A DNA stretch of 63,506 nucleotides, filler included, from Sluysia triapertura (Eukaryota): NCBI GenBank assembly GCA_046118255.1. It is 5 parts of 5 records of this genome, joined end to end, with 100 filler letters (N's around TTAATTAATTAA, not from the genome) between each part and the next. Parts side by side here need not be neighbours in the genome. Positions count along the whole stretch, not along the records: positions 52,481 to 63,506 come from JBJNIA010189975.1; 4 more parts are not named here. One strand, written 5' to 3'. Shown here in pieces: positions 52,381 through 63,506 of the stretch. The first letter of the stretch is position 1. Each line of letters starts with the position of its first letter. The position numbers and the translations under genes are program-made. The notes beneath the pieces are model-generated. The model saw only the letters and a program-made list of their open reading frames with translations, did no database searches and was not told the DNA's origin.

Positions 52381-53379
52381 NNNNNNNNNNNNNNNNNNNN
52401 NNNNNNNNNNNNNNNNNNNNNNNNTTAATTAATTAANNNNNNNNNNNNNNNNNNNNNNNNNNNNNNNNNNNNNNNNNNNNTGAACTGGATGTAGAAGTTT
52501 ATTAAGTTAGAGATAGTTGAAGTATGAATTGATTTGTTGTTGAATATAAGCTAGTGAGGTATTGTGATTGTGGGATGTTGTTTCGTGAGATTATGATGAT
52601 GCAGTTGTATAATAAGGATGTAACTGTTGAGAAAATGGTATTTTAATGAGATTAAGTTTAAAATTGTTGAATTTAAATTTAAGTTATTAATGTTGACCAC
52701 TACAATAATTAACATGAAGAAGTGGAAAAAGGAATCAGAGAGGTGAAGGTGAAAACATCTAGAGCCTCCCGAATGCCTTATAAACTACTAAATAACTTTA
52801 AAACCTCAATAAAACCTTTAAACATGGAATAAGATTAAGTCTAAAAATAGATTAATTAATTAAAAATCTTAATTAACTTAATTAAGAAAAAAATACGCTT
52901 TTGTGAATAACTTTTGAATGCGAGGAGCTATGTTAAATTTGAAACTGTGTATGTATTTGTTTCGAAAATACCTTTCGATGAAAGTATGGTTTGACCGAGT
53001 TCATGCAAAGAAAGCCTTAATATTGAGCAAAGTCAAATTTTAATTAATTTGTAATTATGAAATGTTGAATTTTTAATACTTATGGTGATGCAAATGTAAT
53101 GAATGGAATATGAGATGAGTGCTACGAAAAAGGAGAATCTATAAGTGAACTCGAAATGTTTGAAAATGGTTCGTTTGAGAATAAGTACCTTAAAACATTT
53201 TTCATTGGAAAATTTGGTGTGAAAAATATAAGTTAATTAAAAAATAGAAAGTGAAATTAAATTCATTACTTTATGTATGTTAATAGTATTGCTGATTGTT
53301 AAGTAACAATAGATCGAGTAGAGTAAAAGGAAATGATGGTTGATAATAAATCAGATTCTTATGTTTTGTACTTAATGAA

Positions 53380-53620
53380 GTTTTACCATGTAATTATCAG
53401 AGTTGTTATTGTCTGTTTGATTCTCAAATAGGTTAGGATGATTTGTGTGAGAGAATGTTTGGTTGTGAGACTGAGAATTGATTGCATGATGAGAGAATAT
53501 AAAATAAAAATTTCTAAATTTTTACAACACAATAACAACAAGGACACTATTATGCAATAATTCAGTGAAGATCCATGCTTAGGGTAATGTTCTTGTTTAT
53601 TTTTTATTTTATTATTTTAA
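53380..53620 (-). repeat. Dispersed repeat; inverted homolog of ~26560-26800
   Basis: Shared blocks GCATGGATCTT...TCTCTCATCAT(C/G)CAATCA...CTCTCACACA...ACAATAAC...TACATGGTA. Confidence 0.75.
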
Positions 53621-54621
53621 AATTAAAATAAGAGGAAAGATAATTTTAATATCATTTGGTGGGAGACTCTCTTATTTTAAAATATATTGTATTTTTTTTA
53701 AGGATTTTAATATTATTTTGTGAGAGACTTAATATTTGAGAGACTTAATATTTAATATTTGTCGTTAAAATATTAGATTTATCCATCAATAATATTTTCA
53801 ACTTTCTAGATATTGATATTTTTCAGACTCTGTTGCGTCACTCCTGGTTTTTTTATAGACTGTCTTATTCTTGATACTATATACGTTATTGCTAATTCTG
53901 TAGTTTTAGTTATTTTATAGTAGTTAGTAAAGACTTATAACAGTAATTTACTGTATTTGATTTTTTATAATCATTAAATTACTGAATTGTCGTTTATTTT
54001 ATTTTAAAACACTTAGTTTTTGGGTTGAATAAATAACATTATCGAAATAAGGAAATTTGTGATAATTTATATTGAATTTAGTGATTAATTATTGAGGTTT
54101 TGTTAAATAGAGTAATCGGTAGTAATATTATTGCGTACAAAGACGCAAGACTTGTATCACTGTATTAAAAATATTAATTTCTTTTATTTGTGAATAATTT
54201 TCGATTACGAACAACGTTTTGACAAATTAGTTGAACCACAACTAAAAAAATAAATGGACACATTCGAAAATTTGTAAGTTAATTTAATTCTGACCTCAGT
54301 ATTAGACAGAATAAAAAGCCAGATATTAAACATTGGGTAATAGAGCAAATAAGTTGAGGATATAGTATATTACACATATTACGCATATAGCATATTACAC
54401 GTTATTGCTAGTCGTCATAGTTACAGACACCCTTATTGCACGTTTTTAGTCGTGTACTGTAAGAAAAACAACAGCAATTGAAGCAAAATAATGTAATATT
54501 TAACAGTTCAGAATAACTAAATAAAACAAAATTAGAATTTAATAAATTTGGTATTATACAATGAATTGAAAAATATATTTATTATTAATAATCAATTTTA
54601 AATATTCAAATACTTTTTAAA

Positions 54622-55686
54622 ATGACAACATCAGGATTATCAAATTTAGTTCGCAGAAATATAATGCGTAAAACAGAAGCATTGATTATTCGCTTAACTG
54701 ATTATCAAGTTTTAAAAGGAAAATATGCTCAATTAACGGAATTAGAAATAACAAATATATGTACTTTACTAAATGATATTTTGGGAACTGAACAAGTATA
54801 TATTGATATAAAATTAGATGAACCTTTATACATATTAGGTGATATATTTGGTCAGTATGGTGATTTATTAAGGATTTTCAATGTGCTTGGACATCCACCG
54901 AAAACAAGATATTTATTTTTAGGAAATTATGTAGATCGTGGTAATCGAAGTATTGAAACTATTGCTTTATTATTCGCTTATAAATTACGATATCCAAAGC
55001 AATTATTTTTGTTGCGAGGCAATCATGAATGTGAAGAAACATCAAAACATTTTGGATTTTATGAGGAATGTGTCAAAAGATATAGTAGACGTCTATGGAA
55101 ATCAATTGTTTCAACATTCGAATATTTGCCAGTTGCTGCTTTTGTAGAAGATAAAATATTTTGTGTACATAGCGGCTTATCACCTGGAGTACATTATTCA
55201 GCTCTTAATTCAGTGAGTTCTTTGAAAGATTATATGGCAAAAGTAATAGGACGTCCAACTGATGTAGCAAATAACGTTTTAGTTACTCATTTTTTATGGA
55301 GTGATCCGGATCCAGAAATCAATCTTTGGGAACAAAATCCAACTGGTTTAGGTTATTTATTTGGATATGACGTAGTAAGTGATTTTTGCGAACGTTTTAA
55401 AATTGAGCAAATTATTCGTAGTAACGAATTAGTTGAAAATGGTTACGAATTTTTTGTCGATAGTCGTTTATTAACTATTTTTAGTGCTCCAAACTATTGT
55501 GGAGCATTTAAAAACAATGGTGCTCTAGTAATGCTTCAAAGACGCAAATTTAGTACTGATATTATCGCAAGAATTAAAATAATAAAACCAATAATGAAAT
55601 TTAGAAGTAAGACTACAGGCAGAATGACAATATCAATTGAAAATACATCAATTACATATCCAAATGAAGAAATGCAATGCGAATAA
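54622..55686 (+). CDS. Intronless PP1-like PPP-family protein, 354 aa, probable pseudophosphatase
   Basis: Uninterrupted ORF with PP1 hallmarks (YLFLG.YVDRG, LRGNHE, GFYEEC..RY, LWSDP, GYEFF, FSAPNYCG), but GDIFGQ, GNYVDRG, NPTG and RSNE at catalytic positions. Confidence 0.95.
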   Translation: MTTSGLSNLVRRNIMRKTEALIIRLTDYQVLKGKYAQLTELEITNICTLLNDILGTEQVYIDIKLDEPLYILGDIFGQYGDLLRIFNVLGHPPKTRYLFLGNYVDRGNRSIETIALLFAYKLRYPKQLFLLRGNHECEETSKHFGFYEECVKRYSRRLWKSIVSTFEYLPVAAFVEDKIFCVHSGLSPGVHYSALNSVSSLKDYMAKVIGRPTDVANNVLVTHFLWSDPDPEINLWEQNPTGLGYLFGYDVVSDFCERFKIEQIIRSNELVENGYEFFVDSRLLTIFSAPNYCGAFKNNGALVMLQRRKFSTDIIARIKIIKPIMKFRSKTTGRMTISIENTSITYPNEEMQCE

Positions 55687-56093
55687 ATTTAAAAAAATTA
55701 TTTCAGAAATTAAAATTGTACATATAACAAATCTATATAATAAGGTTTTATGTATCCCATAGACAAATGATACTATGTAGTTTAAAAAAGAATCTTTATG
55801 TATTGTTTTATCTACTAATAGTTTTTAGAAATATCGAAGTCAATTACGTTTTAGTAATACGCAATTACAAAATATGTATATTTGAATTTATATTTTACTT
55901 TTACATATTGAATATGAAATTTTTTAAGTAAAATAGTCTCGAAATTCTTTTTTATATTTTTAATTTATAATCAAATCTCTTGAAGTTATACAATATTATT
56001 ATTATTATTATTATAATTATTATTATTAATTCAATGTTAACTAAGATAACATTTCCAAAGAAAAACAATAGAAATTATAATATAATTTGCATT

Positions 56094-56327
56094 TTAAATC
56101 AGTCTTTCTAAAGGCGGTATTCTTACAATAAAATGCATTTCCTTAAAATCATTGTCAGCTATTTCCTTTCGAGTTGGTTTATATTTACCGTGAAATCTCC
56201 GATTTTCTTTGACATGGTAAAAAATTAAACTAAATAAAGTAATAAAGAAAACTATTAATCCTATCGTGAAAACATTTGTTAGAATAGAATTTTCTTTAGG
56301 CTTATTAAAAGGTTTACGAATACAGAA
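56094..56327 (-). CDS. crb: Crumbs-family C-terminus: transmembrane helix, FERM-binding motif and PDZ-binding ERLI
   Basis: 78 open codons after an AG: FCIRKPFNKPKENSILTNVFTIGLIVFFITLFSLIFYHVKENRRFHGKYKPTRKEIADNDFKEMHFIVRIPPLERLI*. Matches Crumbs RR..G.Y.P...E....PP.ERLI*. Confidence 0.85.
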   Translation of the reverse strand, partial: FCIRKPFNKPKENSILTNVFTIGLIVFFITLFSLIFYHVKENRRFHGKYKPTRKEIADNDFKEMHFIVRIPPLERLI

Positions 56328-56759
56328 CTTTTATTTTATAACAATTGAAATATAACATTCAAACAAAAATATGTAATAAATATAATAATTGTTGATTAAA
56401 ATTATACTAATGATAGTTCTTGTGTGCTGCTAAATTTGCTGCTGCCGCCTTTGCTGCCATAAATGTTCTCTATCAGCTAAAGGTCTATTAGAATACGAGA
56501 GACATATCCACTCAACATATAATAATTGATAACATTCATAAACACAAAGAATTGAGGTTACGCTCACTATAATAAATAAGAGAAAAATGAAAGAAAATAA
56601 AATTATGGAACCAATTCGGAAAAGAGTTAAAAAAAGTTGAATATATGTAAAGGAAAAAGGAATATTATATAATATATTCAGTTATGAGAGTAAAATTATT
56701 TACTTAGGAGAGTAAAATTATTAAAATATTAAATGACTTAAAATATTAGAAAGTATGAC

Positions 56760-58960
56760 ATTGAAACCTCTACCCTGGATATTGGAGCGTATGATCCCTA
56801 TAGGTATTAAAGGATTGCTGCGACAGACTCGTGATGTCCACTTTTCGGAAACCCAAGGATTTCAGTAAAATTTCATTTTCCGGATCCCAGGAACCGAGGG
56901 TCCCTTTAACAAAAGTGACAGTTTAATTGTTTTGTAATTTTTTCCTAAGATTCTCGTATTTTTCATTATTCAGAGTTCAGGCAGCTCTAAAGTTTTCATA
57001 TTTGTCAATGGGAGATCTGACATCCATGACATAGAGCTGAAAGGAGTTTGTTTTCCGAGCCTGAATATCTGGTCGTCACTATCACCGACTATCGGTGTTT
57101 ACCAATCTTTTTCAACTTGTCCATCAAAAAATTCAGGATTTTATTATATCTAACTGCGTACCAAATGACGCTGCGCTAGGGATTCTTTTTCAAAACCACA
57201 CCAGCGACATGTAATAGGAATTCCTAAGCGAATGTTCTGCGGAAAAAAGTTAATCTTCAGGATATTGTTGCGCGCTTTAACTATAAATATCCAACATTGG
57301 TCATTTAATCCGAGTGAGAATGGTATGCCAGAGAGGGTACTTTTCATAAGGCAGTCAACAAATAAGCCATGACATGTACAAGTTTTCCAAATACGGCTAT
57401 TAGAAAGACTGATCAGCTCATGTAGATATTTCCCCACTTTATCTTTAAGAAACTGACCAAACGTAACTTTTTCGTCCCCAATAATGTCGGATTTAATTTG
57501 ATCATCGGCGAGAATGAAGGTGACCTAGATGTTGTATCTACGCTGCAAATTAAGGATGGAGATTCTAATTCTAGACCACCAAGTTTGTAGTTGTGCAACT
57601 CGACATCCATTTAACCAAGATAGTGCATGGGTTATTCTCAGTTACCTGGTTTAGGCGATTCGCTGAAACCGTCATAATTTCGTGCAGTGCCAGATTAAGA
57701 AGGAGTAATGTGCGGCTGTTAAAGAGGCGGAAATTGTCCGCAATATAGTCATCATAATCAGAAATCAAACTAAAATCTCCACGATTTTTATGAGCAGAGA
57801 AGAAACAATTATTCAGAGGAAACTTTTGCAAGCCCAGAAATAATTTGAAAATCTAATGGATCATTTTATCGCAACCTACCTATTTGGAGATTGTTTACCA
57901 TGGGGACTACTCAAAGTTTGAGTATTGATATTGAGGTTATGGAAATGAAGCGGGAAACGTGAGTGTAAGAAGTTTCGATACATAAGAAACTTTTTCTTAC
58001 AACTGAGACTACACCTTTGTATCTTTCGGGCACATACAAGATTGTTCTTCAGAAGTTTGTTAACGCTGTTGGGATAAAGGCATAAAGTGCCATGAAGTAT
58101 AATGGACTATAGTAATCTAAAAATTGTTGACAGAGCTGATAGATCAGTGGATAAAGCATCGAACTGCGCAGCGAGAGGTTCCGGGTTCGATACCCGGTCA
58201 ATCCATTTTATGAAATCTAGCAACACTTTGTTTCTTCAGTTCACGAAATGGGACCCCTAACTAAATCATTGTTTTCTCTTAAGTCCGTTCCATCTTCGGT
58301 ATCGGTATATTGTTAATTCTAAGACACAGTTCATTATAGGCAATGTTACTGTAGTAGAAGCATATAGTGGGACGGAAAATTAAGTATGCTAACTTTGCTT
58401 GTTCAACTAACTGTTGTAGTTGTTCATATGGTATGTGGATTAAGGCAATATCATCTGTATAAGCGAGGTTTTGGGGAAATGAAGTGCCACTAGTCAAGAA
58501 GTCATCCTCTGGATGGAAGGAATAATATGAAGCCAATGGTAATACAAAATAGCGTCATTGACAATGGCCGACCCTGTTTGATGCCATACTTAATTTGAAC
58601 ACTTGTAACCAGCGGTATTGCCATCATAAATGTTCCGCAGAAGGTTGAGGGTGTGTTGATGGAGACCCATCAAAGAAAGTGTATGCCAGAGAGGCTGATG
58701 AGGTAGAGACCTAAAAGTGTTGGCATTATCTAGAAATACGATATGAAGTTCTTTCTGCAGTTTCTTTTTATGATTCAAAGAAACTGTGAAGGAAATTATG
58801 TCAGTGCAGCCATCAGAGCGAAGAAGCGCTGCTTGGTAAGGACTTATTAGGTTTCAACAGTGGATCCAAGATAAAAGGCGATCATTAAAGATTCTATATG
58901 TAGAATCAAGGATCGCAATAATTTACCAGTAAGCAACTTCAAAAGCGGCGTGGACTTTAT
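56760..58960 (-). mobile_element. Decayed RLE-type non-LTR retrotransposon (NeSL/Utopia/R2-like)
   Basis: RT: LHIVFLDNANTFRSLPH, GIKQGRPLSMTLF, LAYTDDIAL, LGVP. C-terminus: CRWCGFEKESL, RPDI, VRSPIDKYENF..KY and LGSWDPENE. Many stops and frameshifts. Confidence 0.9.
58070..58221 (+). mobile_element. ~150-bp dispersed cassette with a tRNA-like core (58133-58205), inserted in the LINE. Partial minus-strand copies at ~32803-32940, 33002-33097, 34819-34895 (+35090-35118), 36928-36981, 47130-47197
   Basis: A box TAGATCAGTGG, B box GGTTCGATACC, T stem CCGGG/CCCGG. Consensus acceptor GGGCTGA/TCAGTCC. The anticodon arm does not pair. Flanks TGGGATACAGGCCTAAAGTGCCAT and ATGAAGTCTAAC are shared between copies. 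Confidence 0.75.
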
Positions 58961-59524
58961 TGGGTTTTATGATGAGTGGTGAATATGGTATATTTTGCAC
59001 ATTTATATTTTATTAAAAAGGAGACAAATGAATTTTCTTGCATGATCTATATTGTAGCTGAACAGTTTAATGATAAATTGTACGTAAAATGAATATTTGT
59101 CATGCATTGCTTGAAACGTCATATTCGGGATAAATTATCGAAATTAGTTTAACAATTTAGACGCACAATTACATTTCAATCTGTGACATTTGTTTAGTCA
59201 CTGAATTATTAATTGCAAATAAGTAACGCACCGAAATAATATTCATAAAAATTTTATCTTATTTCAATAATACATGTAACGTTTTAATCATTATTTTCTT
59301 ACACCAATAACCTGTTGAATAATTAAATTCTGGTACTTATGTTTCTACACTTTCATCACATATAAAATGTCGAATTATTATTGTAATCCATAAGATAAAA
59401 ATCATTTTTATAAGTTAAATTCAAAATATTGCAAAATTTTAAAAAATTAATTTTTTAGAAATAATTAATAAAACTTTTACTGAAGTCTATCGAATAGATT
59501 GTTTCATAAATTGGTACAATATCC

Positions 59525-59527
<3 letters not shown>

Positions 59528-59600
<73 letters not shown>
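59528..59600. repeat. (ATT/AAT)n microsatellite; similar tracts at ~2735-2787, 30827-30877, 44095-44129, 52309-52380
   Basis: Read directly from the sequence. Confidence 0.95.
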
Positions 59601-59603
<3 letters not shown>

Positions 59604-60116
59604 ATTCATAAGTAACTAAGCATGGTATCACGTTTAGAAACAAACTGTATAAATAAAAAAACCAAATAAAAAAGAATATTTAAAACTTTTGAATAACAAT
59701 AATTCGAATAATGGAAACCATAAATAAAAGTTAAATCCAATCAATCTTAAAACTTAAATCATTAAAAACTTAAAAATTTACCAAAATACAACATATTTTA
59801 TCGTAAATAACACCAGATATATAAAGCCAATTGAAAAATTCTAAAATTCATTTCATTTTAAATCAACTTTTCATAAATAAATTTAATAAATTATTTTATT
59901 TTGATATGTTAATTAAAATGACGTTCCATTAAAAAAATACGAAGATACTTTAATGATTTTTCATATTAAAAGTGCATTTTCAAGCATTATATCTAATATT
60001 ATTCTTAAATAGAAATCAAATTTTAATTAAACACGACTTCTTATTCACAGTTGATAGAATTAATAAATTCATTCAAACTTAGAAGAGGATGAAATAATCT
60101 GAATATTTTGAGAATA

Positions 60117-60147
<31 letters not shown>

Positions 60148-61050
60148 TAAACATAATAATAATCTAACGAGTACTCATAGGATAAAAGAAATCCACATTG
60201 TTTAGTAATGTATCCAGAACAAATCTCAAACTCCCATCACTTTCAATATTTCTAAATTTGAAAAAACTCTTCAAAAACATAGTTTTTCATTTATCATTTA
60301 TTATATGTGTGATCGCAGTCAGTTTATAATAATTGTTTGTACTAGTTCGTGCCACACATAGATGGATTGTTATAAAACAATAAAATAGATATAGGATATT
60401 TATTTTTCCCTCTGAAGCCCTGGTAGCAAAAGGGTTGATTAGTTAAGTTAACATTATGTATATGCAAACATTTTTCTTGGATCATATTAAATTAATTAAT
60501 TTAATAATTTGTGAAATGTGTAATAAAACATTTACTTGCAAATGTCTGCTTTATCCATTAACTCTTTAAAAAAGAAGATATAATTTATATCTTTATTGAA
60601 TTACTACTATAAATTAAACAATAAAGATTACTAGATCTAACACCGACGATGCTGATATCTCATTTTAAAATATCCAAAATCAATTAAAATATTTTATTGA
60701 AATAAATAAAAGTTAAATCTAATAATTGCAAATAAAATTTTCTTTAAGTTATTTATTATTTCATTAATTATTAACATTATTATTTTGATTTTTTATTGTT
60801 TACTTTATATAATAATAATTAATGAAAAACAAAAGCAATTTTGAATATTAATTAATATATTATTGTAGTAATTAATGCAATCAGAAATAAATAATATTCA
60901 TTTAGTAAAACTTTCCATAAATACTTAAATTTCAAGAAATAATTTTGTATAGTCTTAGTATTATAAAATAATTAAAAATTTAATACGATTGAATCAGAGA
61001 AAATCTATAATTATTTTAAAAACAAATTAGTTACTTATGTTTAACAGTAA

Positions 61051-61302
61051 CTAAATATTTAATAAAATATCAATTATAAAATTAGTTAAATAAACTAACA
61101 TAGTAGTTGCATTTGAAGTACCACTAAACAAGTTTGGAATAAATACAGTACATATATTTTGAATTCCCATGCGATTAAACTCTTCTTGTTCTATAACATT
61201 TACCAGAAATCGTAAAAGATATTCCAAATTATTACTCACATGAGGTGGTAATCCATTTATGACATCTCGTAATTTCCACAACGCCTTTTGTTTGTCACCG
61301 TT
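61051..61302 (-). CDS. RhoGAP-domain protein, C-terminal domain exon
   Basis: KLRDVINGLPPHVSNNLEYLLRFLVNVIEQEEFNRMGIQNICTVFIPNLF matches RhoGAP LP..N...L.YL..FL..V......N.M...N...VF.PNL. CAG acceptor at 61305-61303; the true 3' end is uncertain. Confidence 0.88.
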   Translation of the reverse strand, partial: NGDKQKALWKLRDVINGLPPHVSNNLEYLLRFLVNVIEQEEFNRMGIQNICTVFIPNLFSGTSNATTMLVYLTNFIIDILLNI

Positions 61303-61777
61303 CTGATGTCTTAAATAAAGAAATTTATTGGAAACGTTTTTTGTTACTATATGAACGTGACTGAGATGAATCAACGTGAGGGCAAACTCGACAACAATCA
61401 TCAGCTGTTATACATCGAAGTATAGCAATTTCGAAAAAGACTATCAGATGGTAAAGGGTATGAATGAAATAACTATGTTGGTAACGAAGAAATGCAGTAT
61501 TGAGGGGACATTATTATAAGTATTAGTTGTTCTAATTCAACCTGCATATTAAGAAAATTGTGGATTAATTGGAATTAATTTAGAAATATAACCTATGATA
61601 GTGATCACTTTTTCATGACTTAACTGTTACGTTTATACCTATATGAATAATTATCAATAATGTTAATACAACCATGGAGATATTACGTTTTAACATGTTA
61701 TATTCAAAATATAACAAAAAATGATAAATACCATGGCATTAGAACATTTATAGCATATTTACAAACTCAACACAAAA

Positions 61778-62137
61778 ATGGATACAAAAATTCAAATTAC
61801 AAGTTTTCTCGAGACCAAACAAGTGAAAAAGAAAGAAATATGGGTAGATTCAAGATGCATTGTCATCTTATTAATTATCAATTTATTAATTAAAGACCTA
61901 AAAGATGGTACAGAAAGTGTAATATTAGATGGATTTCCAATTACTGATAATGCACGAATTTACACAGAGAAAAAGCTAAATTTATCAATTTTATTTGGGT
62001 ATTTTGCTTAGGTGCGTTGTCAAATTAGAAATCTTAAAACCGATAGAGTTGATGATCGTCGCATTCCTACCAATGCGCGAATAAATGAATATGAAAACCA
62101 GTTACACGAAATTAAAGACAATTTTAAAATAAATTAA
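61778..62137 (+). pseudogene. Adenylate/UMP-CMP kinase-like remnant, antisense inside a RhoGAP intron
   Basis: VILDGFP, then in the same frame after a TAG: RVDDRRIPTNARINEYENQ (compare AK1 RVDDNEETIKKRLETY). No P-loop found. Confidence 0.55.
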
Positions 62138-62413
62138 AAAATAATTATCTGTTAGAAAAAATCAATAAATTAATTAAAATGGCAAAAAATTAAAAAATTT
62201 TACTGAGTAGTTTAATAATAAAAATAAGAGCAAAATTATGATGAATGAATCTACAGCATTTCTGAATGATATCTATTCTAGCATTTCAATGGGAATATTC
62301 TATTCAGAGTTTAGTTTTCTTTGAAAATGATTTCCTACTTGTCAGTTCTTATGAGTGAGCGAGATAACATAGATGCTACAATCCTTAGTAACCAGAATAA
62401 TTAAGTTACTTAC

Positions 62414-62434
62414 GATGATTACGTCAATTGTTTC
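62414..62434 (-). CDS. RhoGAP 21-nt micro-exon (ETIDVII)
   Basis: TTTAG acceptor and GTAAGT donor; phase 0/0; bridges the flanking RhoGAP exons in frame. Confidence 0.55.
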
Positions 62435-62639
62435 CTAAATTAATGTGAAATATATATTTTGAATTAATGGTTGGTTGGAAAATTGTGTTTGATAATTAAT
62501 GTCAATATACGGATGCAAAATAGATCAGATAGCAACTATTAGAAATTATTCTTTGTTTGCTTTAAGAATACATAAATTAAATTTTTATGTACTTTCAAAA
62601 AACATAAGTAGCAAAAACTAACAGTTCATAACATTCTAC

Positions 62640-62771
62640 CCATTGTGTCTTATTTACACAACCCAACAATTGTACTGGTAATTGGCGTAGATATCGTTTG
62701 AATATATCTGCCACAACATCTGCAGGCCACACATATTTAACTTCATCACATTTCATTAAATTCATGATTTC
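62640..62771 (-). CDS. RhoGAP-domain exon
   Basis: TTTTTAG acceptor; 132 nt. EIMNLMKCDEVKYVWPADVVADIFKRYLRQLPVQLLGCVNKTQW matches D...VA..LK.YLR.LP.PL. Confidence 0.85.
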
Positions 62772-63506
62772 CTAAAAACAGTAAATGAATAAATTTAGGT
62801 TTAAAAAGATTTAAATTTTAAAAATTATTCAAATCTTAAATTTGATTAATATTTGAAAAAAAATCCGAAAATTAACGGAAAACTTCGATGTTCTAAAAAT
62901 AAAGTAAACTTGGGATTATGTTTACTGTGTTACAAGTAATTTATATATTGGAATACATACATAATAAAAAATATGCATTATCAAAAAAAATTAAAGAATA
63001 TTTTGAGAAAGACATAAGTAATCATATTGACATTACATTCATTTCATTTACTGCTTTTTCAGTTAGATTATCGCGAATTTTCTCCCTTGAAAATTCTAAA
63101 AATTATAGCGGACCCATAAAGAATCCAACGGTAAATCACTTTATAAAATTCGCTCAGTTTTACTGAATTTATAATTTTATAATCGAAATTTAAAAACAAT
63201 GGACAACCATATTTGACCATGACATATCATTGGACGAGGATGTGATTATAAATAATAGATATACAATACCTATTGCGGATTATTTAAGTTTAATTTCAGT
63301 TAGAATACTTTTCTGAGAATGAATTCACTTTGTAATACACTATATAATTTAATTTATTAAATTTTCGAACTTTAGGATAATAAAAGAAATTTATTATTCA
63401 AAAGTTGACTAAGACTTCAATAAATTCCAAGAATGTAAAACCAAATTTTCGAATGATCTGGAATTTTCGATAAGTTCCATTAATTCTGATTGGCTGCTGA
63501 CTACTA

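What the first reader, a model, noticed from the sequence alone, without database searches (positions are those of the whole stretch)
54622..55686. Intact, intronless PP1 paralogue with a dismantled active site: candidate PPP pseudophosphatase
Seen: a 354-aa ORF with no stops, in DNA where most other intronless gene copies are badly decayed. Against canonical PP1 (human PP1-alpha numbering), GDIHGQ is GDIFGQ (H66F), GDYVDRG is GNYVDRG (bridging D92N), NDRG is NPTG (phosphate-binding R221T) and RAHQ is RSNE (H248N). D64, R96, N124, H125, H173 and SAPNYC are kept. Established: H66, D92 and H248 are metal ligands of PPP phosphatases, and PPP pseudophosphatases are rare in animals. Inference: a retroposed PP1 kept under selection as a catalytically dead scaffold, decoy for PP1 regulators, or phospho-substrate trap, perhaps germline-specific. 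It also has an insertion after HSGLSP and a novel basic C-terminal tail.
Basis: partly seen in the sequence, partly recalled or inferred. Interest (0 to 1): 0.85.

Follow-up and report, generated by a model that had tools for sequence, protein, structure and literature searches.

The report
Conserved flatworm PP1-derived pseudophosphatase gene
This intact gene encodes a protein shaped like protein phosphatase 1 but lacking several residues needed for catalysis, and the same losses are kept under strong selection in tapeworms, flukes and monogeneans, so it belongs to an old, apparently undescribed family of "dead" phosphatases in parasitic flatworms.

Summary
ORF 54622-55686 (+) is open for 354 codons (chance about 4e-15 in this AT-rich DNA). 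It matches PP1 (E about 5e-85) and carries GDIFGQ, GNYVDRG, NPTG and RSNE in place of GDIHGQ, GDYVDRG, NDRG and RAHQ.

It is not a recent retrocopy. It falls in a well-supported clade (bootstrap 100 / SH-aLRT 97) of PP1-like proteins from cestodes, trematodes and a monogenean. In 40 clade members:
- His66 is never kept.
- Asp92 is always Asn, and Asp220 is always Pro.
- Arg221 is never kept.
- His248 survives in only 9, all from one trematode subfamily.
- Asp95, Arg96 and Asn124 decay further in places.

All members share a 10-residue insertion and a C-terminal strand motif. The PP1-like body is a single exon in every genomic locus examined.

Selection is strong: dN/dS is 0.04-0.11 among taeniid orthologues, and synonymous sites are saturated against the closest relative (72% identity). 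The AlphaFold2 model (pLDDT 90) has the PP1 fold.

Best reading: a non-catalytic PP1-fold binding protein. The loss of both phosphate-binding arginines and a remodelled RVxF channel weigh against a simple phospho-substrate trap or regulator decoy. Expression, partners and lack of activity remain untested. I found no paper describing the family.

The parts
54622..55686 (+). Single-exon coding sequence (354 codons plus TAA) of the PP1-derived pseudophosphatase
   Evidence: ORF list. Pfam Metallophos 2.5e-29. PP1 E about 5e-85. Chance of staying open about 4e-15. Orthologues at 72% to 46% identity.
54838..54855 (+). GDIFGQ (residues 73-78), the degenerate GDxHG motif. Asp64 equivalent is kept; His66 is Phe76.
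   Evidence: Alignment to PP1-alpha. In the clade this position is Tyr17/Phe16/Leu4/Arg2/Cys1 and never His, against His in 15/15 canonical PP1.
54922..54942 (+). GNYVDRG (residues 101-107), the degenerate GDxVDRG motif. The bridging Asp92 is Asn102; Asp95 and Arg96 are kept in this protein.
   Evidence: Asn in 40/40 clade members. Asp95 is kept in 15/40 and Arg96 in 26/40.
55018..55029 (+). GNHE (residues 133-136). The Asn124 and His125 equivalents are kept here.
   Evidence: Across the clade Asn124 is Asn25/Lys10/Arg5, and His125 is kept in 37/40.
55168..55170 (+). His183, the His173 equivalent, invariant in the family. It is followed by the family-specific Ser184 (PP1 Gly174).
   Evidence: His 40/40. 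(Gly174 to Ser in 38/40).
55186..55251 (+). Region holding the family-specific 10-residue insertion after SGLSP. The model predicts a helix at residues 198-208.
   Evidence: Alignments: every clade member has the insertion and no canonical PP1 does. AlphaFold2 gives pLDDT of 90 or more for helix 198-208.
55336..55347 (+). NPTG (residues 239-242) in place of NDRG. Asp220 is Pro and the phosphate-binding Arg221 is Thr.
   Evidence: Pro in 40/40. Position 221 is Ala24/Val5/Cys4/Thr3/Ile3/Gly1 and never Arg.
55417..55428 (+). RSNE (residues 266-269) in place of RAHQ. The metal ligand His248 is Asn268.
   Evidence: His248 is kept in 9/40 members, all in the trematode-only subfamily; otherwise Asn15/Ser13. 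Ala247 is Ser in 38/40.
55483..55500 (+). SAPNYC (residues 288-293), the beta12-beta13 loop. It is canonical in this protein.
   Evidence: Across the clade Tyr272 is kept in 13/40 and Cys273 in 2/40, so it is not a family constraint.
55585..55683 (+). Family-specific C-terminal tail (residues 322-354). It carries the motif KPIM.[FL]R.K.TGRM.I.I, with a predicted beta-strand at residues 336-341.
   Evidence: Conserved across monogenean, cestode and most trematode members, and replaced by a similar alternating-hydrophobic strand in the other subfamily. Strand 336-341 has pLDDT about 66-68.

Best explanation
The ORF is one member, probably the orthologue from a monogenean-like lineage, of an ancient single-exon gene family derived from the PP1 catalytic subunit. 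Named members come only from parasitic flatworms (Neodermata).

The common ancestor of the family had already lost His66 (now aromatic), the metal-bridging Asp92 (now Asn), Asp220 (now Pro) and the phosphate-binding Arg221. Later His248 was lost in most lineages, and Asn124, Asp95 and Arg96 decayed in some.

The protein keeps the PP1 fold but cannot assemble the binuclear metal centre or hold phosphate as PP1 does. It therefore most likely acts without catalysis, by binding. The parts that stay conserved are:
- the former catalytic cleft (Asp64, Asn92, His173, Trp206, Asn219 and Pro220 are invariant);
- a family-specific inserted helix;
- a consistently remodelled RVxF channel;
- a family-specific C-terminal strand.

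Shown: sequence state, family membership, fold prediction, purifying selection. Inferred: absence of activity and action by binding. Unknown: partner, tissue, phenotype.
For: - Substitutions confirmed.
- The clade of 40 sequences is monophyletic at 100/97. Its internal order (window + Logan relative + Protopolystoma; then cestodes; then trematodes) resembles the species groups, as expected for vertical descent.
- An exhaustive profile search shows a score gap: clade representatives score 400-527 bits and canonical PP1 349 or less. All named clade members are cestodes, trematodes or the monogenean Protopolystoma.
- Catalytic residues decay stepwise across the family while D64, N92, H173 and P220 stay invariant. 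This pattern is expected once catalysis is no longer selected.
- Selection: dN/dS is 0.04-0.11 for Taenia and Echinococcus pairs. Window against closest relative gives dN 0.23 with dS saturated. GC3 of the ORF is 0.14 against 0.45 in the relative, yet the frame stays open.
- The AlphaFold2 model has pLDDT 90.4 and pTM 0.90. It superposes on PP1 structures at target-normalised TM 0.92-0.95 and rmsd about 2 A.
- The literature states that changing the GDxxDRG aspartates disrupts PPP activity, and that PfPPP8, with GNLINRG, showed no pNPP activity (PMC10317984).
Against: - No biochemical data exist. Asn side chains can still ligate metals.
- This protein keeps D64, R96, N124, H125 and H173, so a weak or altered hydrolytic activity is not excluded.
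- No RNA data exist for this organism, so expression is inferred from selection only.
- Restriction to Neodermata may reflect poor database coverage of free-living flatworms.
- The binding mode is inference. The one interaction test tried gave no verdict.
Confidence: 0.8

Rival explanations
1. It is still an enzyme: a PP1-like hydrolase with an unconventional, perhaps mononuclear, metal site or a changed substrate. The conserved D64, N92, N124, H125 and H173 would form a working site.
For: D64 and H173 are invariant and H125 is kept in 37/40 members. This protein also keeps R96 and N124. The cleft region holds many of the family's invariant residues.
Against: - His66 is replaced by Phe, Tyr or Leu, which cannot ligate a metal.
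- The bridging carboxylate is gone in 40/40 and Arg221 in 40/40.
- The remaining catalytic residues are not held: N124 becomes Lys or Arg in 15/40, D95 is lost in 25/40, R96 in 14/40 and H248 in 31/40.
- A Lys or Arg at position 124 would occupy the metal site.
- PfPPP8, with a comparable GN..N.G motif, was inactive on pNPP (PMC10317984).
Confidence: 0.1
2. It is a specific phospho-substrate trap or a decoy for canonical PP1 regulators that dock through RVxF.
For: The fold is intact. I169 and F257 of the RVxF channel and the acidic rim are broadly kept. Other pseudophosphatases, such as STYX and EGG-4/5, work this way (as summarised in PMC10317984).
Against: - Both phosphate-binding arginines are dispensable in the family: R221 0/40 and R96 26/40.
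- There is no metal-activated site to hold phosphate.
- The RVxF channel is changed in a family-wide manner: F293 to Ile/Leu/Val in 38/40 (0 Phe), L243 to Gln in 29/40, R261 lost, C291 to Gly in 17/40.

Canonical RVxF docking is therefore unlikely to be preserved unchanged.
Confidence: 0.15
3. It is a young processed pseudogene or neutrally drifting retrocopy of PP1 that has not yet acquired a stop codon.
For: It is intronless. An AATAAA overlaps the stop codon at 55682-55687, which is common by chance in 75% A+T DNA.
Against: - P(open) is about 4e-15 at neutral composition.
- Orthologues with the same substitutions, insertion and tail occur in three flatworm classes.
- dS is saturated while protein identity is 72%.
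- dN/dS is 0.04-0.11 in orthologues.
- No poly(A) tract or flanking duplication was seen.
Confidence: 0.01

Closest known systems
PP1 catalytic subunit (PPP1CA/B/C; Glc7; Drosophila flw)
   Same: - Same fold (target-normalised TM 0.92-0.95) and 43-45% identity.
- GNHE, His173, Trp206 and SAPNYC (in this protein) are kept.
- Same length of core and same N-terminal helices.
   Different: - His66, Asp92, Asp220, Arg221 and His248 are replaced.
- There is a 10-residue insertion after SGLSP.
- The RVxF channel is remodelled: F293I, L243Q, R261S, C291A in this protein.
- The disordered TPPR tail is replaced by a conserved strand motif.
- It forms its own clade on a long stem (0.53-0.57 changes per site).
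PfPPP8 and apicomplexan relatives (PPP-type pseudophosphatase; PMC10317984)
   Same: It is a PPP-fold protein whose GDxxDRG motif reads GN..NRG, like the cestode members (GNYINRG). It is conserved across a parasite lineage, and the recombinant domain is inactive on pNPP.
   Different: PfPPP8 is described as a basal-complex protein of protists, not as a PP1-subfamily derivative. No sequence comparison with it was made here. The flatworm family is a compact, PP1-sized, single-domain protein in animals, and it also loses His66, Arg221 and usually His248.
Kinetoplastid-specific PPP pseudophosphatases (kPPP; PMC2175518)
   Same: They were predicted from substitutions of catalytic PPP residues and are lineage-specific in parasites.
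   Different: They occur in protists, were predicted by bioinformatics only, and have a different PPP origin. They were not compared by sequence here.
STYX and EGG-4/5 type pseudophosphatases
   Same: The concept is the same: a dead phosphatase fold used for binding (as reviewed in PMC10317984).
   Different: They have a different fold (Cys-based PTP/DUSP) and keep the phosphate-binding loop. The flatworm family has lost its phosphate-binding arginines.
Testis-specific PP1 paralogues (for example the Macrostomum lignano testis-specific PP1-like gene RNA815_7008, PMC4490696; mammalian PP1-gamma2; Drosophila and C. elegans sperm PP1s, from memory)
   Same: They are divergent extra PP1 copies, and knock-down of the Macrostomum gene disturbs spermiogenesis. 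They offer a plausible tissue context.
   Different: As far as I know, those are regarded as active enzymes.

Membership tests
PPP superfamily / PP1 subfamily (as a fold and lineage) | Calcineurin-like metallophosphoesterase domain with closest similarity to PP1 | tested here: met
   Pfam PF00149 2.5e-29. PP1 chains score E about 5e-85, against PP2A at 2e-58 and calcineurin at 5e-50. The model has the PP1 fold.
PP1 as an active enzyme | GDxHG motif with Asp64 and His66 as M1 ligands | tested here: not met
   GDIFGQ; His66 is Phe76. No clade member of 40 has His.
PP1 as an active enzyme | GDxVDRG motif with the bridging Asp92 | tested here: not met
   GNYVDRG; Asn in 40/40.
PP1 as an active enzyme | GNHE (Asn124 and His125) and His173 | tested here: met
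   N134, H135 and H183 are present. In the family, Asn124 is Lys or Arg in 15/40.
PP1 as an active enzyme | His248 as M2 ligand, and Arg221 plus Arg96 for phosphate binding | tested here: not met
   H248N and R221T; R96 is kept here.
PP1 as an active enzyme | Measured phosphatase activity and bound metals | not testable with these tools
   Needs recombinant protein.
PP1 holoenzyme subunit | Canonical RVxF-binding channel (I169, L243, F257, R261, V264, L289, C291, F293; residue list from memory of Egloff et al. 1997) | tested here: not met
   I169 and F257 are kept, but L243Q, R261S, V264L, L289I, C291A and F293I in this protein. F293 is 0/40 in the family.
Pseudophosphatase (pseudoenzyme) | Phosphatase fold lacking residues essential for catalysis | tested here: met
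Pseudophosphatase (pseudoenzyme) | Maintained by purifying selection, with orthologues that share the inactivating changes | tested here: met
Pseudophosphatase (pseudoenzyme) | Expressed, and experimentally inactive | not testable with these tools
   No RNA run holds the sequence.
PfPPP8-type pseudophosphatase family | Orthology to apicomplexan PPP8 | not tested
   No PPP8 sequence was in hand. The flatworm clade sits next to PP1 sequences in the tree, so it is more likely an independent origin.
Processed pseudogene / recent retrocopy | Intronless copy with poly(A) remnant, target-site duplications, disabling mutations and a lineage-restricted distribution | tested here: not met
   It is intronless, but the frame is intact and no poly(A) tract or flanking duplication was seen. 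Orthologues occur in three flatworm classes.

The most novel reading that the evidence does not exclude
This would be the first PPP-family pseudoenzyme family recognised in animals: an ancient PP1-derived, catalytically dead protein. It arose at or before the origin of parasitic flatworms, is retained as one copy in monogenean and cestode lineages, is expanded to several paralogues in trematodes, and is annotated throughout the databases as an active Ser/Thr phosphatase.

A more speculative extension concerns the family-specific C-terminal strand (R-M-x-I-x-I). It may lie in the remodelled RVxF channel in cis. The protein would then be a self-capped PP1 mimic that competes for, or chaperones, partners binding the PP1 cleft face rather than the RVxF groove.
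Probability: 0.55. Interest if true: 0.7.

Novelty: new variant of a known kind. Interest (0 to 1): 0.62.

Why it matters
- PP1 is among the most conserved eukaryotic enzymes. Pseudophosphatases are well known in the Cys-based families but barely known in the PPP family. A 2023 paper presents PfPPP8 as the first (PMC10317984), and kinetoplastid candidates were only predicted (PMC2175518).
- A compact PP1-derived dead enzyme under strong selection across tapeworms, flukes and monogeneans would give a natural system for asking what a PP1 fold does without catalysis.
- It would correct the functional annotation of dozens of helminth proteins now labelled as active phosphatases with an EC-type name.
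- It would add a parasite-lineage-specific protein, with no close host counterpart, to the list of candidates for helminth biology, possibly reproduction.

Tried and rejected
- Expression: only one public run holds the DNA. It is probably the source, is held as contigs and is not RNA. Laying it showed no differences, but this is not independent.
- I looked for poly(A) tails on short Logan contigs carrying clade members (L001, L009, L010) to argue for transcription. None was found, so this is inconclusive.
- Synteny: six-frame fragments of the Spirometra and Echinococcus loci matched only the gene itself in the 11-kb piece. The Mtp-like neighbour seen downstream in both cestodes is not in the piece.
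- Tail docking: complex prediction of the core (1-322) against the tail (323-354) gave no verdict (score 0.02). This is neither for nor against.
- Literature: searches by concept and by orthologue accession or locus tag found no description of this family. The library lacks most subscription journals (for example Chen, Dixon and Manning 2017), so prior mention cannot be excluded.
- Schistosoma: a search with the Trichobilharzia member P0035 returned no Schistosoma protein. This could be a loss, a missing annotation or the limits of the word index. It was not resolved.
- dN/dS for the window gene itself cannot be estimated properly because dS is saturated (NG86 and YN00 fail; LWL85 gives omega about 0.14).
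- Young-pseudogene and chance-ORF readings were rejected.

Full report
**Scope.** Only the finding's piece, 52481-63506, was used. No contig was taken for human and no N stretch was touched.

**1. Observation.**
- ORF 54622..55686 (+) encodes 354 residues. It is by far the longest ORF of the piece; the next is 116 aa.
- The piece is very A+T-rich, with GC of 0.15-0.40 and mostly about 0.25. At that composition a stop is expected every 11 codons or so. The chance of 354 open codons is about 4e-15. In 2000 shuffles of the ORF the longest open run was 121 codons.
- The protein hits Pfam Metallophos (2.5e-29). Among solved structures it is closest to PP1 alpha, beta and gamma (E 5e-85 to 2e-83), ahead of PP2A (2e-58) and calcineurin (5e-50).
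- The printed alignment to PP1-alpha shows GDIFGQ for GDIHGQ, GNYVDRG for GDYVDRG, NPTG for NDRG and RSNE for RAHQ. It also shows ten extra residues after SGLSP and a tail unrelated to PP1's.
- Contigs of the one public run that holds the DNA agree at every base. That run may be the source of the assembly.

**2. What it is.** The closest proteins are not canonical PP1.
- They are a set of flatworm proteins: an unnamed Logan contig product at 72% identity; cestodes (Spirometra, Mesocestoides, Echinococcus, Anoplocephala, Hymenolepis, Rodentolepis) at 52-58%; the monogenean Protopolystoma at 58% (partial); and many trematode proteins at 43-50%. Cluster look-ups add Taenia, Hydatigera, Fasciola, Paragonimus, Opisthorchis, Clonorchis and Trichobilharzia.
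- All of these lack the Pfam N-terminal PP1 domain hit and share the odd motifs.
- A profile of 33 members, searched exhaustively against 1.84 billion representatives, gives a clear gap. Clade representatives score 400-527 bits and canonical single-domain PP1 349 or less. The higher-scoring non-flatworm rows are predicted two-domain fusions.
- In a maximum-likelihood tree (55 rows, LG+C20), the 40 flatworm sequences form one clade with support 100/97 on a long stem. The window groups with the Logan relative (99/88), then with Protopolystoma (96/88), then with cestodes (93/76). Trematode paralogues lie outside these, and a second, trematode-only subfamily (100/98) branches first.
- This order resembles the species groups, as expected for vertical descent. 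It suggests the window comes from a monogenean-like flatworm, though the organism is not known to me.

**3. State of the functional sites across the family** (40 members against 15 canonical PP1; PP1-alpha numbering).

| Site | State in the 40 clade members |
|---|---|
| His66 | Tyr17 / Phe16 / Leu4 / Arg2 / Cys1 (no His) |
| Asp92 | Asn 40/40 |
| Asp220 | Pro 40/40 |
| Arg221 | Ala24 / Val5 / Cys4 / Thr3 / Ile3 / Gly1 (no Arg) |
| His248 | His in 9 only, all in the trematode-only subfamily; otherwise Asn15 / Ser13 |
| Asn124 | Asn25 / Lys10 / Arg5 |
| Asp95 | kept in 15 |
| Arg96 | kept in 26 |
| His125 | kept in 37 |
| Asp64, His173, Trp206 | invariant |

- The first hits (66, 92, 220, 221) were therefore in the common ancestor, and the remaining catalytic residues then decayed lineage by lineage. 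This is the pattern expected after loss of catalysis, not of an enzyme with an altered mechanism.
- Family signature positions also include N86R, G174S, S224G, L236C, C245I and A247S.
- The RVxF channel (residue list from memory of Egloff et al. 1997) is changed in a consistent way. Phe293 becomes Ile/Leu/Val (no Phe), Leu243 becomes Gln in 29/40, Arg261 is lost and Cys291 becomes Gly in 17. Ile169 and Phe257 stay.
- The toxin-loop Cys273 survives in 2/40.
- Every member has the insertion after SGLSP and a C-terminal extension with an alternating-hydrophobic strand. In the monogenean, cestode and most trematode members this reads KPI[MI].LR.K.T.RMN[IV].[IL].

**4. Selection and gene structure.**
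- Against the closest relative (L001) dN is 0.23 and synonymous sites are saturated. NG86 and YN00 fail, and LWL85 gives omega about 0.14.
- The window ORF has GC3 of 0.14 against 0.45 in the relative. Silent sites have therefore fully drifted to the genome's composition while the protein stayed 72% identical and open.
- Where dS is measurable (Taenia crassiceps, T. asiatica, Echinococcus multilocularis, E. granulosus), dN/dS is 0.04-0.11. For the very close Echinococcus pair it is 0.3-0.4 on few changes.
- The PP1-like body is one exon in every genomic locus read:
  - the window;
  - Spirometra x2 (365 aa in 1098 bp);
  - Taenia x2 and Anoplocephala (360 aa in 1083 bp);
  - Echinococcus x2 (one ORF for the core; the annotated 45-bp intron lies in a dubious N-terminal extension);
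  - Fasciola gigantica (381 aa in 1146 bp);
  - Paragonimus (residues 1-349 in one exon; the last 16 come from a predicted exon 17 kb away).
- Intronlessness is therefore ancestral to the family. An ancient retroposition is possible but not demonstrable, and there is no sign of a recent one.

**5. Structure.** With the family alignment, AlphaFold2 gives mean pLDDT 90.4 and pTM 0.90. The inserted segment forms a confident helix (198-208). A strand at 336-341 in the tail is modelled at moderate confidence. Foldseek returns PP1 structures only, with target-normalised TM 0.92-0.95, rmsd about 2 A and 42-44% identity.

**6. Mechanism.**
- Shown: the PP1 fold, loss of three of six metal ligands and of Arg221, family-wide conservation, and purifying selection.
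- Established knowledge: the GDxxDRG aspartates and the His ligands hold the two metals, and changing them disrupts PPP activity (as stated in PMC10317984). From my memory, mutagenesis of PP1 and lambda phosphatase gives losses of several orders of magnitude.
- Inference: the protein is catalytically dead and acts by binding.
- The invariant residues concentrate in the former cleft, so that face probably remains the functional surface.
- Both phosphate-binding arginines are expendable, which argues against a classic phospho-substrate trap.
- The RVxF channel is conserved in a family-specific form, which argues against a simple decoy for canonical RVxF regulators.
- One idea is that the family's own C-terminal strand (R-M-x-I-x-I, hydrophobics at i and i+2 as in RVxF) lies in that channel in cis. 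I could not test it: no coordinates are given, and the complex test gave no verdict.
- Tissue context is unknown. By analogy with extra PP1 copies in other animals, and with a testis-specific PP1-like gene in the free-living flatworm Macrostomum whose knock-down disturbs spermiogenesis (PMC4490696), the male germline is a reasonable first place to look. Orthology to that gene was not tested.

**7. Comparison with what is known.**
- The protein descends from PP1 but fails the tests for an active PP1 (motifs 1 and 2, His248, Arg221) and for a canonical RVxF channel.
- The nearest described concept is the PPP-type pseudophosphatase. PfPPP8 (GNLINRG) was presented in 2023 as the first in the PPP family. 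Kinetoplastid PPP pseudophosphatases were predicted in 2007. Both are protist proteins of different origin.
- I found no paper on a flatworm or other animal PP1-derived pseudophosphatase, either by concept or by accession. The library does not hold most subscription journals.

**8. Verdict.** The core of the interpretation, a selected PPP pseudophosphatase, is supported. The 'retrocopy in this lineage', 'substrate trap' and 'regulator decoy' details are not. It is a new variant of a known kind. Interest is moderate to high (0.62). The main open points are activity, expression and partner.

Noticed in passing
window 61051-61401 (-): A 116-aa ORF matches the C-terminal half of the RhoGAP domain (PF00620, 2.7e-13, profile positions 70-145). 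It is probably one exon of a multi-exon RhoGAP gene on the minus strand.
   Followed up: partly
window about 57000-59000 (-): An island of higher G+C (0.38-0.40, against 0.22-0.30 around it) holds several short broken ORFs. One (58590-58778) weakly matches reverse transcriptase RVT_1 (E 1.7e-4, below the Pfam cut-off). It looks like a decayed non-LTR retroelement fragment.
   Followed up: partly
window 55994-56030, 59520-59605, 60101-60184: There are long (TAT)n / (ATT)n microsatellites. The tracts at 59.5 kb and 60.1 kb are in opposite orientation about 500 bp apart, forming inverted repeats at 82-92% complementarity. This is simple-sequence complementarity rather than a designed hairpin.
   Followed up: no
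window 55682-55687: AATAAA overlaps the last codon and the TAA stop of the ORF. It is a possible polyadenylation signal, but such hexamers are frequent by chance in 75% A+T DNA.
   Followed up: no
related proteins P0033, P0035, P0335 (Trichobilharzia); no Schistosoma hit: Avian schistosomes (Trichobilharzia szidati and T. regenti) carry at least three family members. A search seeded with one of them returned no Schistosoma protein, although Schistosoma proteomes are well represented.
   Followed up: partly
related proteins, trematode paralogues (for example P0015, P0018-P0021, P0024, P0027, P0028, P0035): Trematodes have several paralogues per genome. In many the metal ligand Asn124 is replaced by Lys or Arg (RGKHEC / RGRHEC). 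That side chain could sit where the metal was, which would be a second, independent sign of a metal-free site.
   Followed up: partly
L011 3555-4805 (+) and 1162-2205 (-); proteins P0181 and P0322: An unnamed Logan protein cluster (organism unknown) is the long-branch sister of the flatworm clade (99/95). It has Asp92 to Asn (LGNYVSHG) but keeps His66, GNHE and His173. Its gene is intronless and lies 1.3 kb from a canonical-looking PPP gene (GDIHGQ, LGDYIDRG, RGHQV, SAPNY). It could be an intermediate state or an independent case. Long-branch placement is unsafe.
   Followed up: partly
L004 6001-7230 and L005 1001-2230 (Echinococcus orthologues): The annotated 394-aa Echinococcus products carry an N-terminal extension with a 45-bp intron that Taenia orthologues (360 aa, intronless) lack. 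The core is a single ORF. The extension is probably a gene-model artefact.
   Followed up: partly
L002, L003 and L004, downstream of the orthologues: In Spirometra and Echinococcus the gene is followed, 3-4 kb downstream on the opposite strand, by a gene with faint or weak Mtp (PF03821) hits. This is conserved local synteny within cestodes that is not seen in the window's 11-kb piece.
   Followed up: partly
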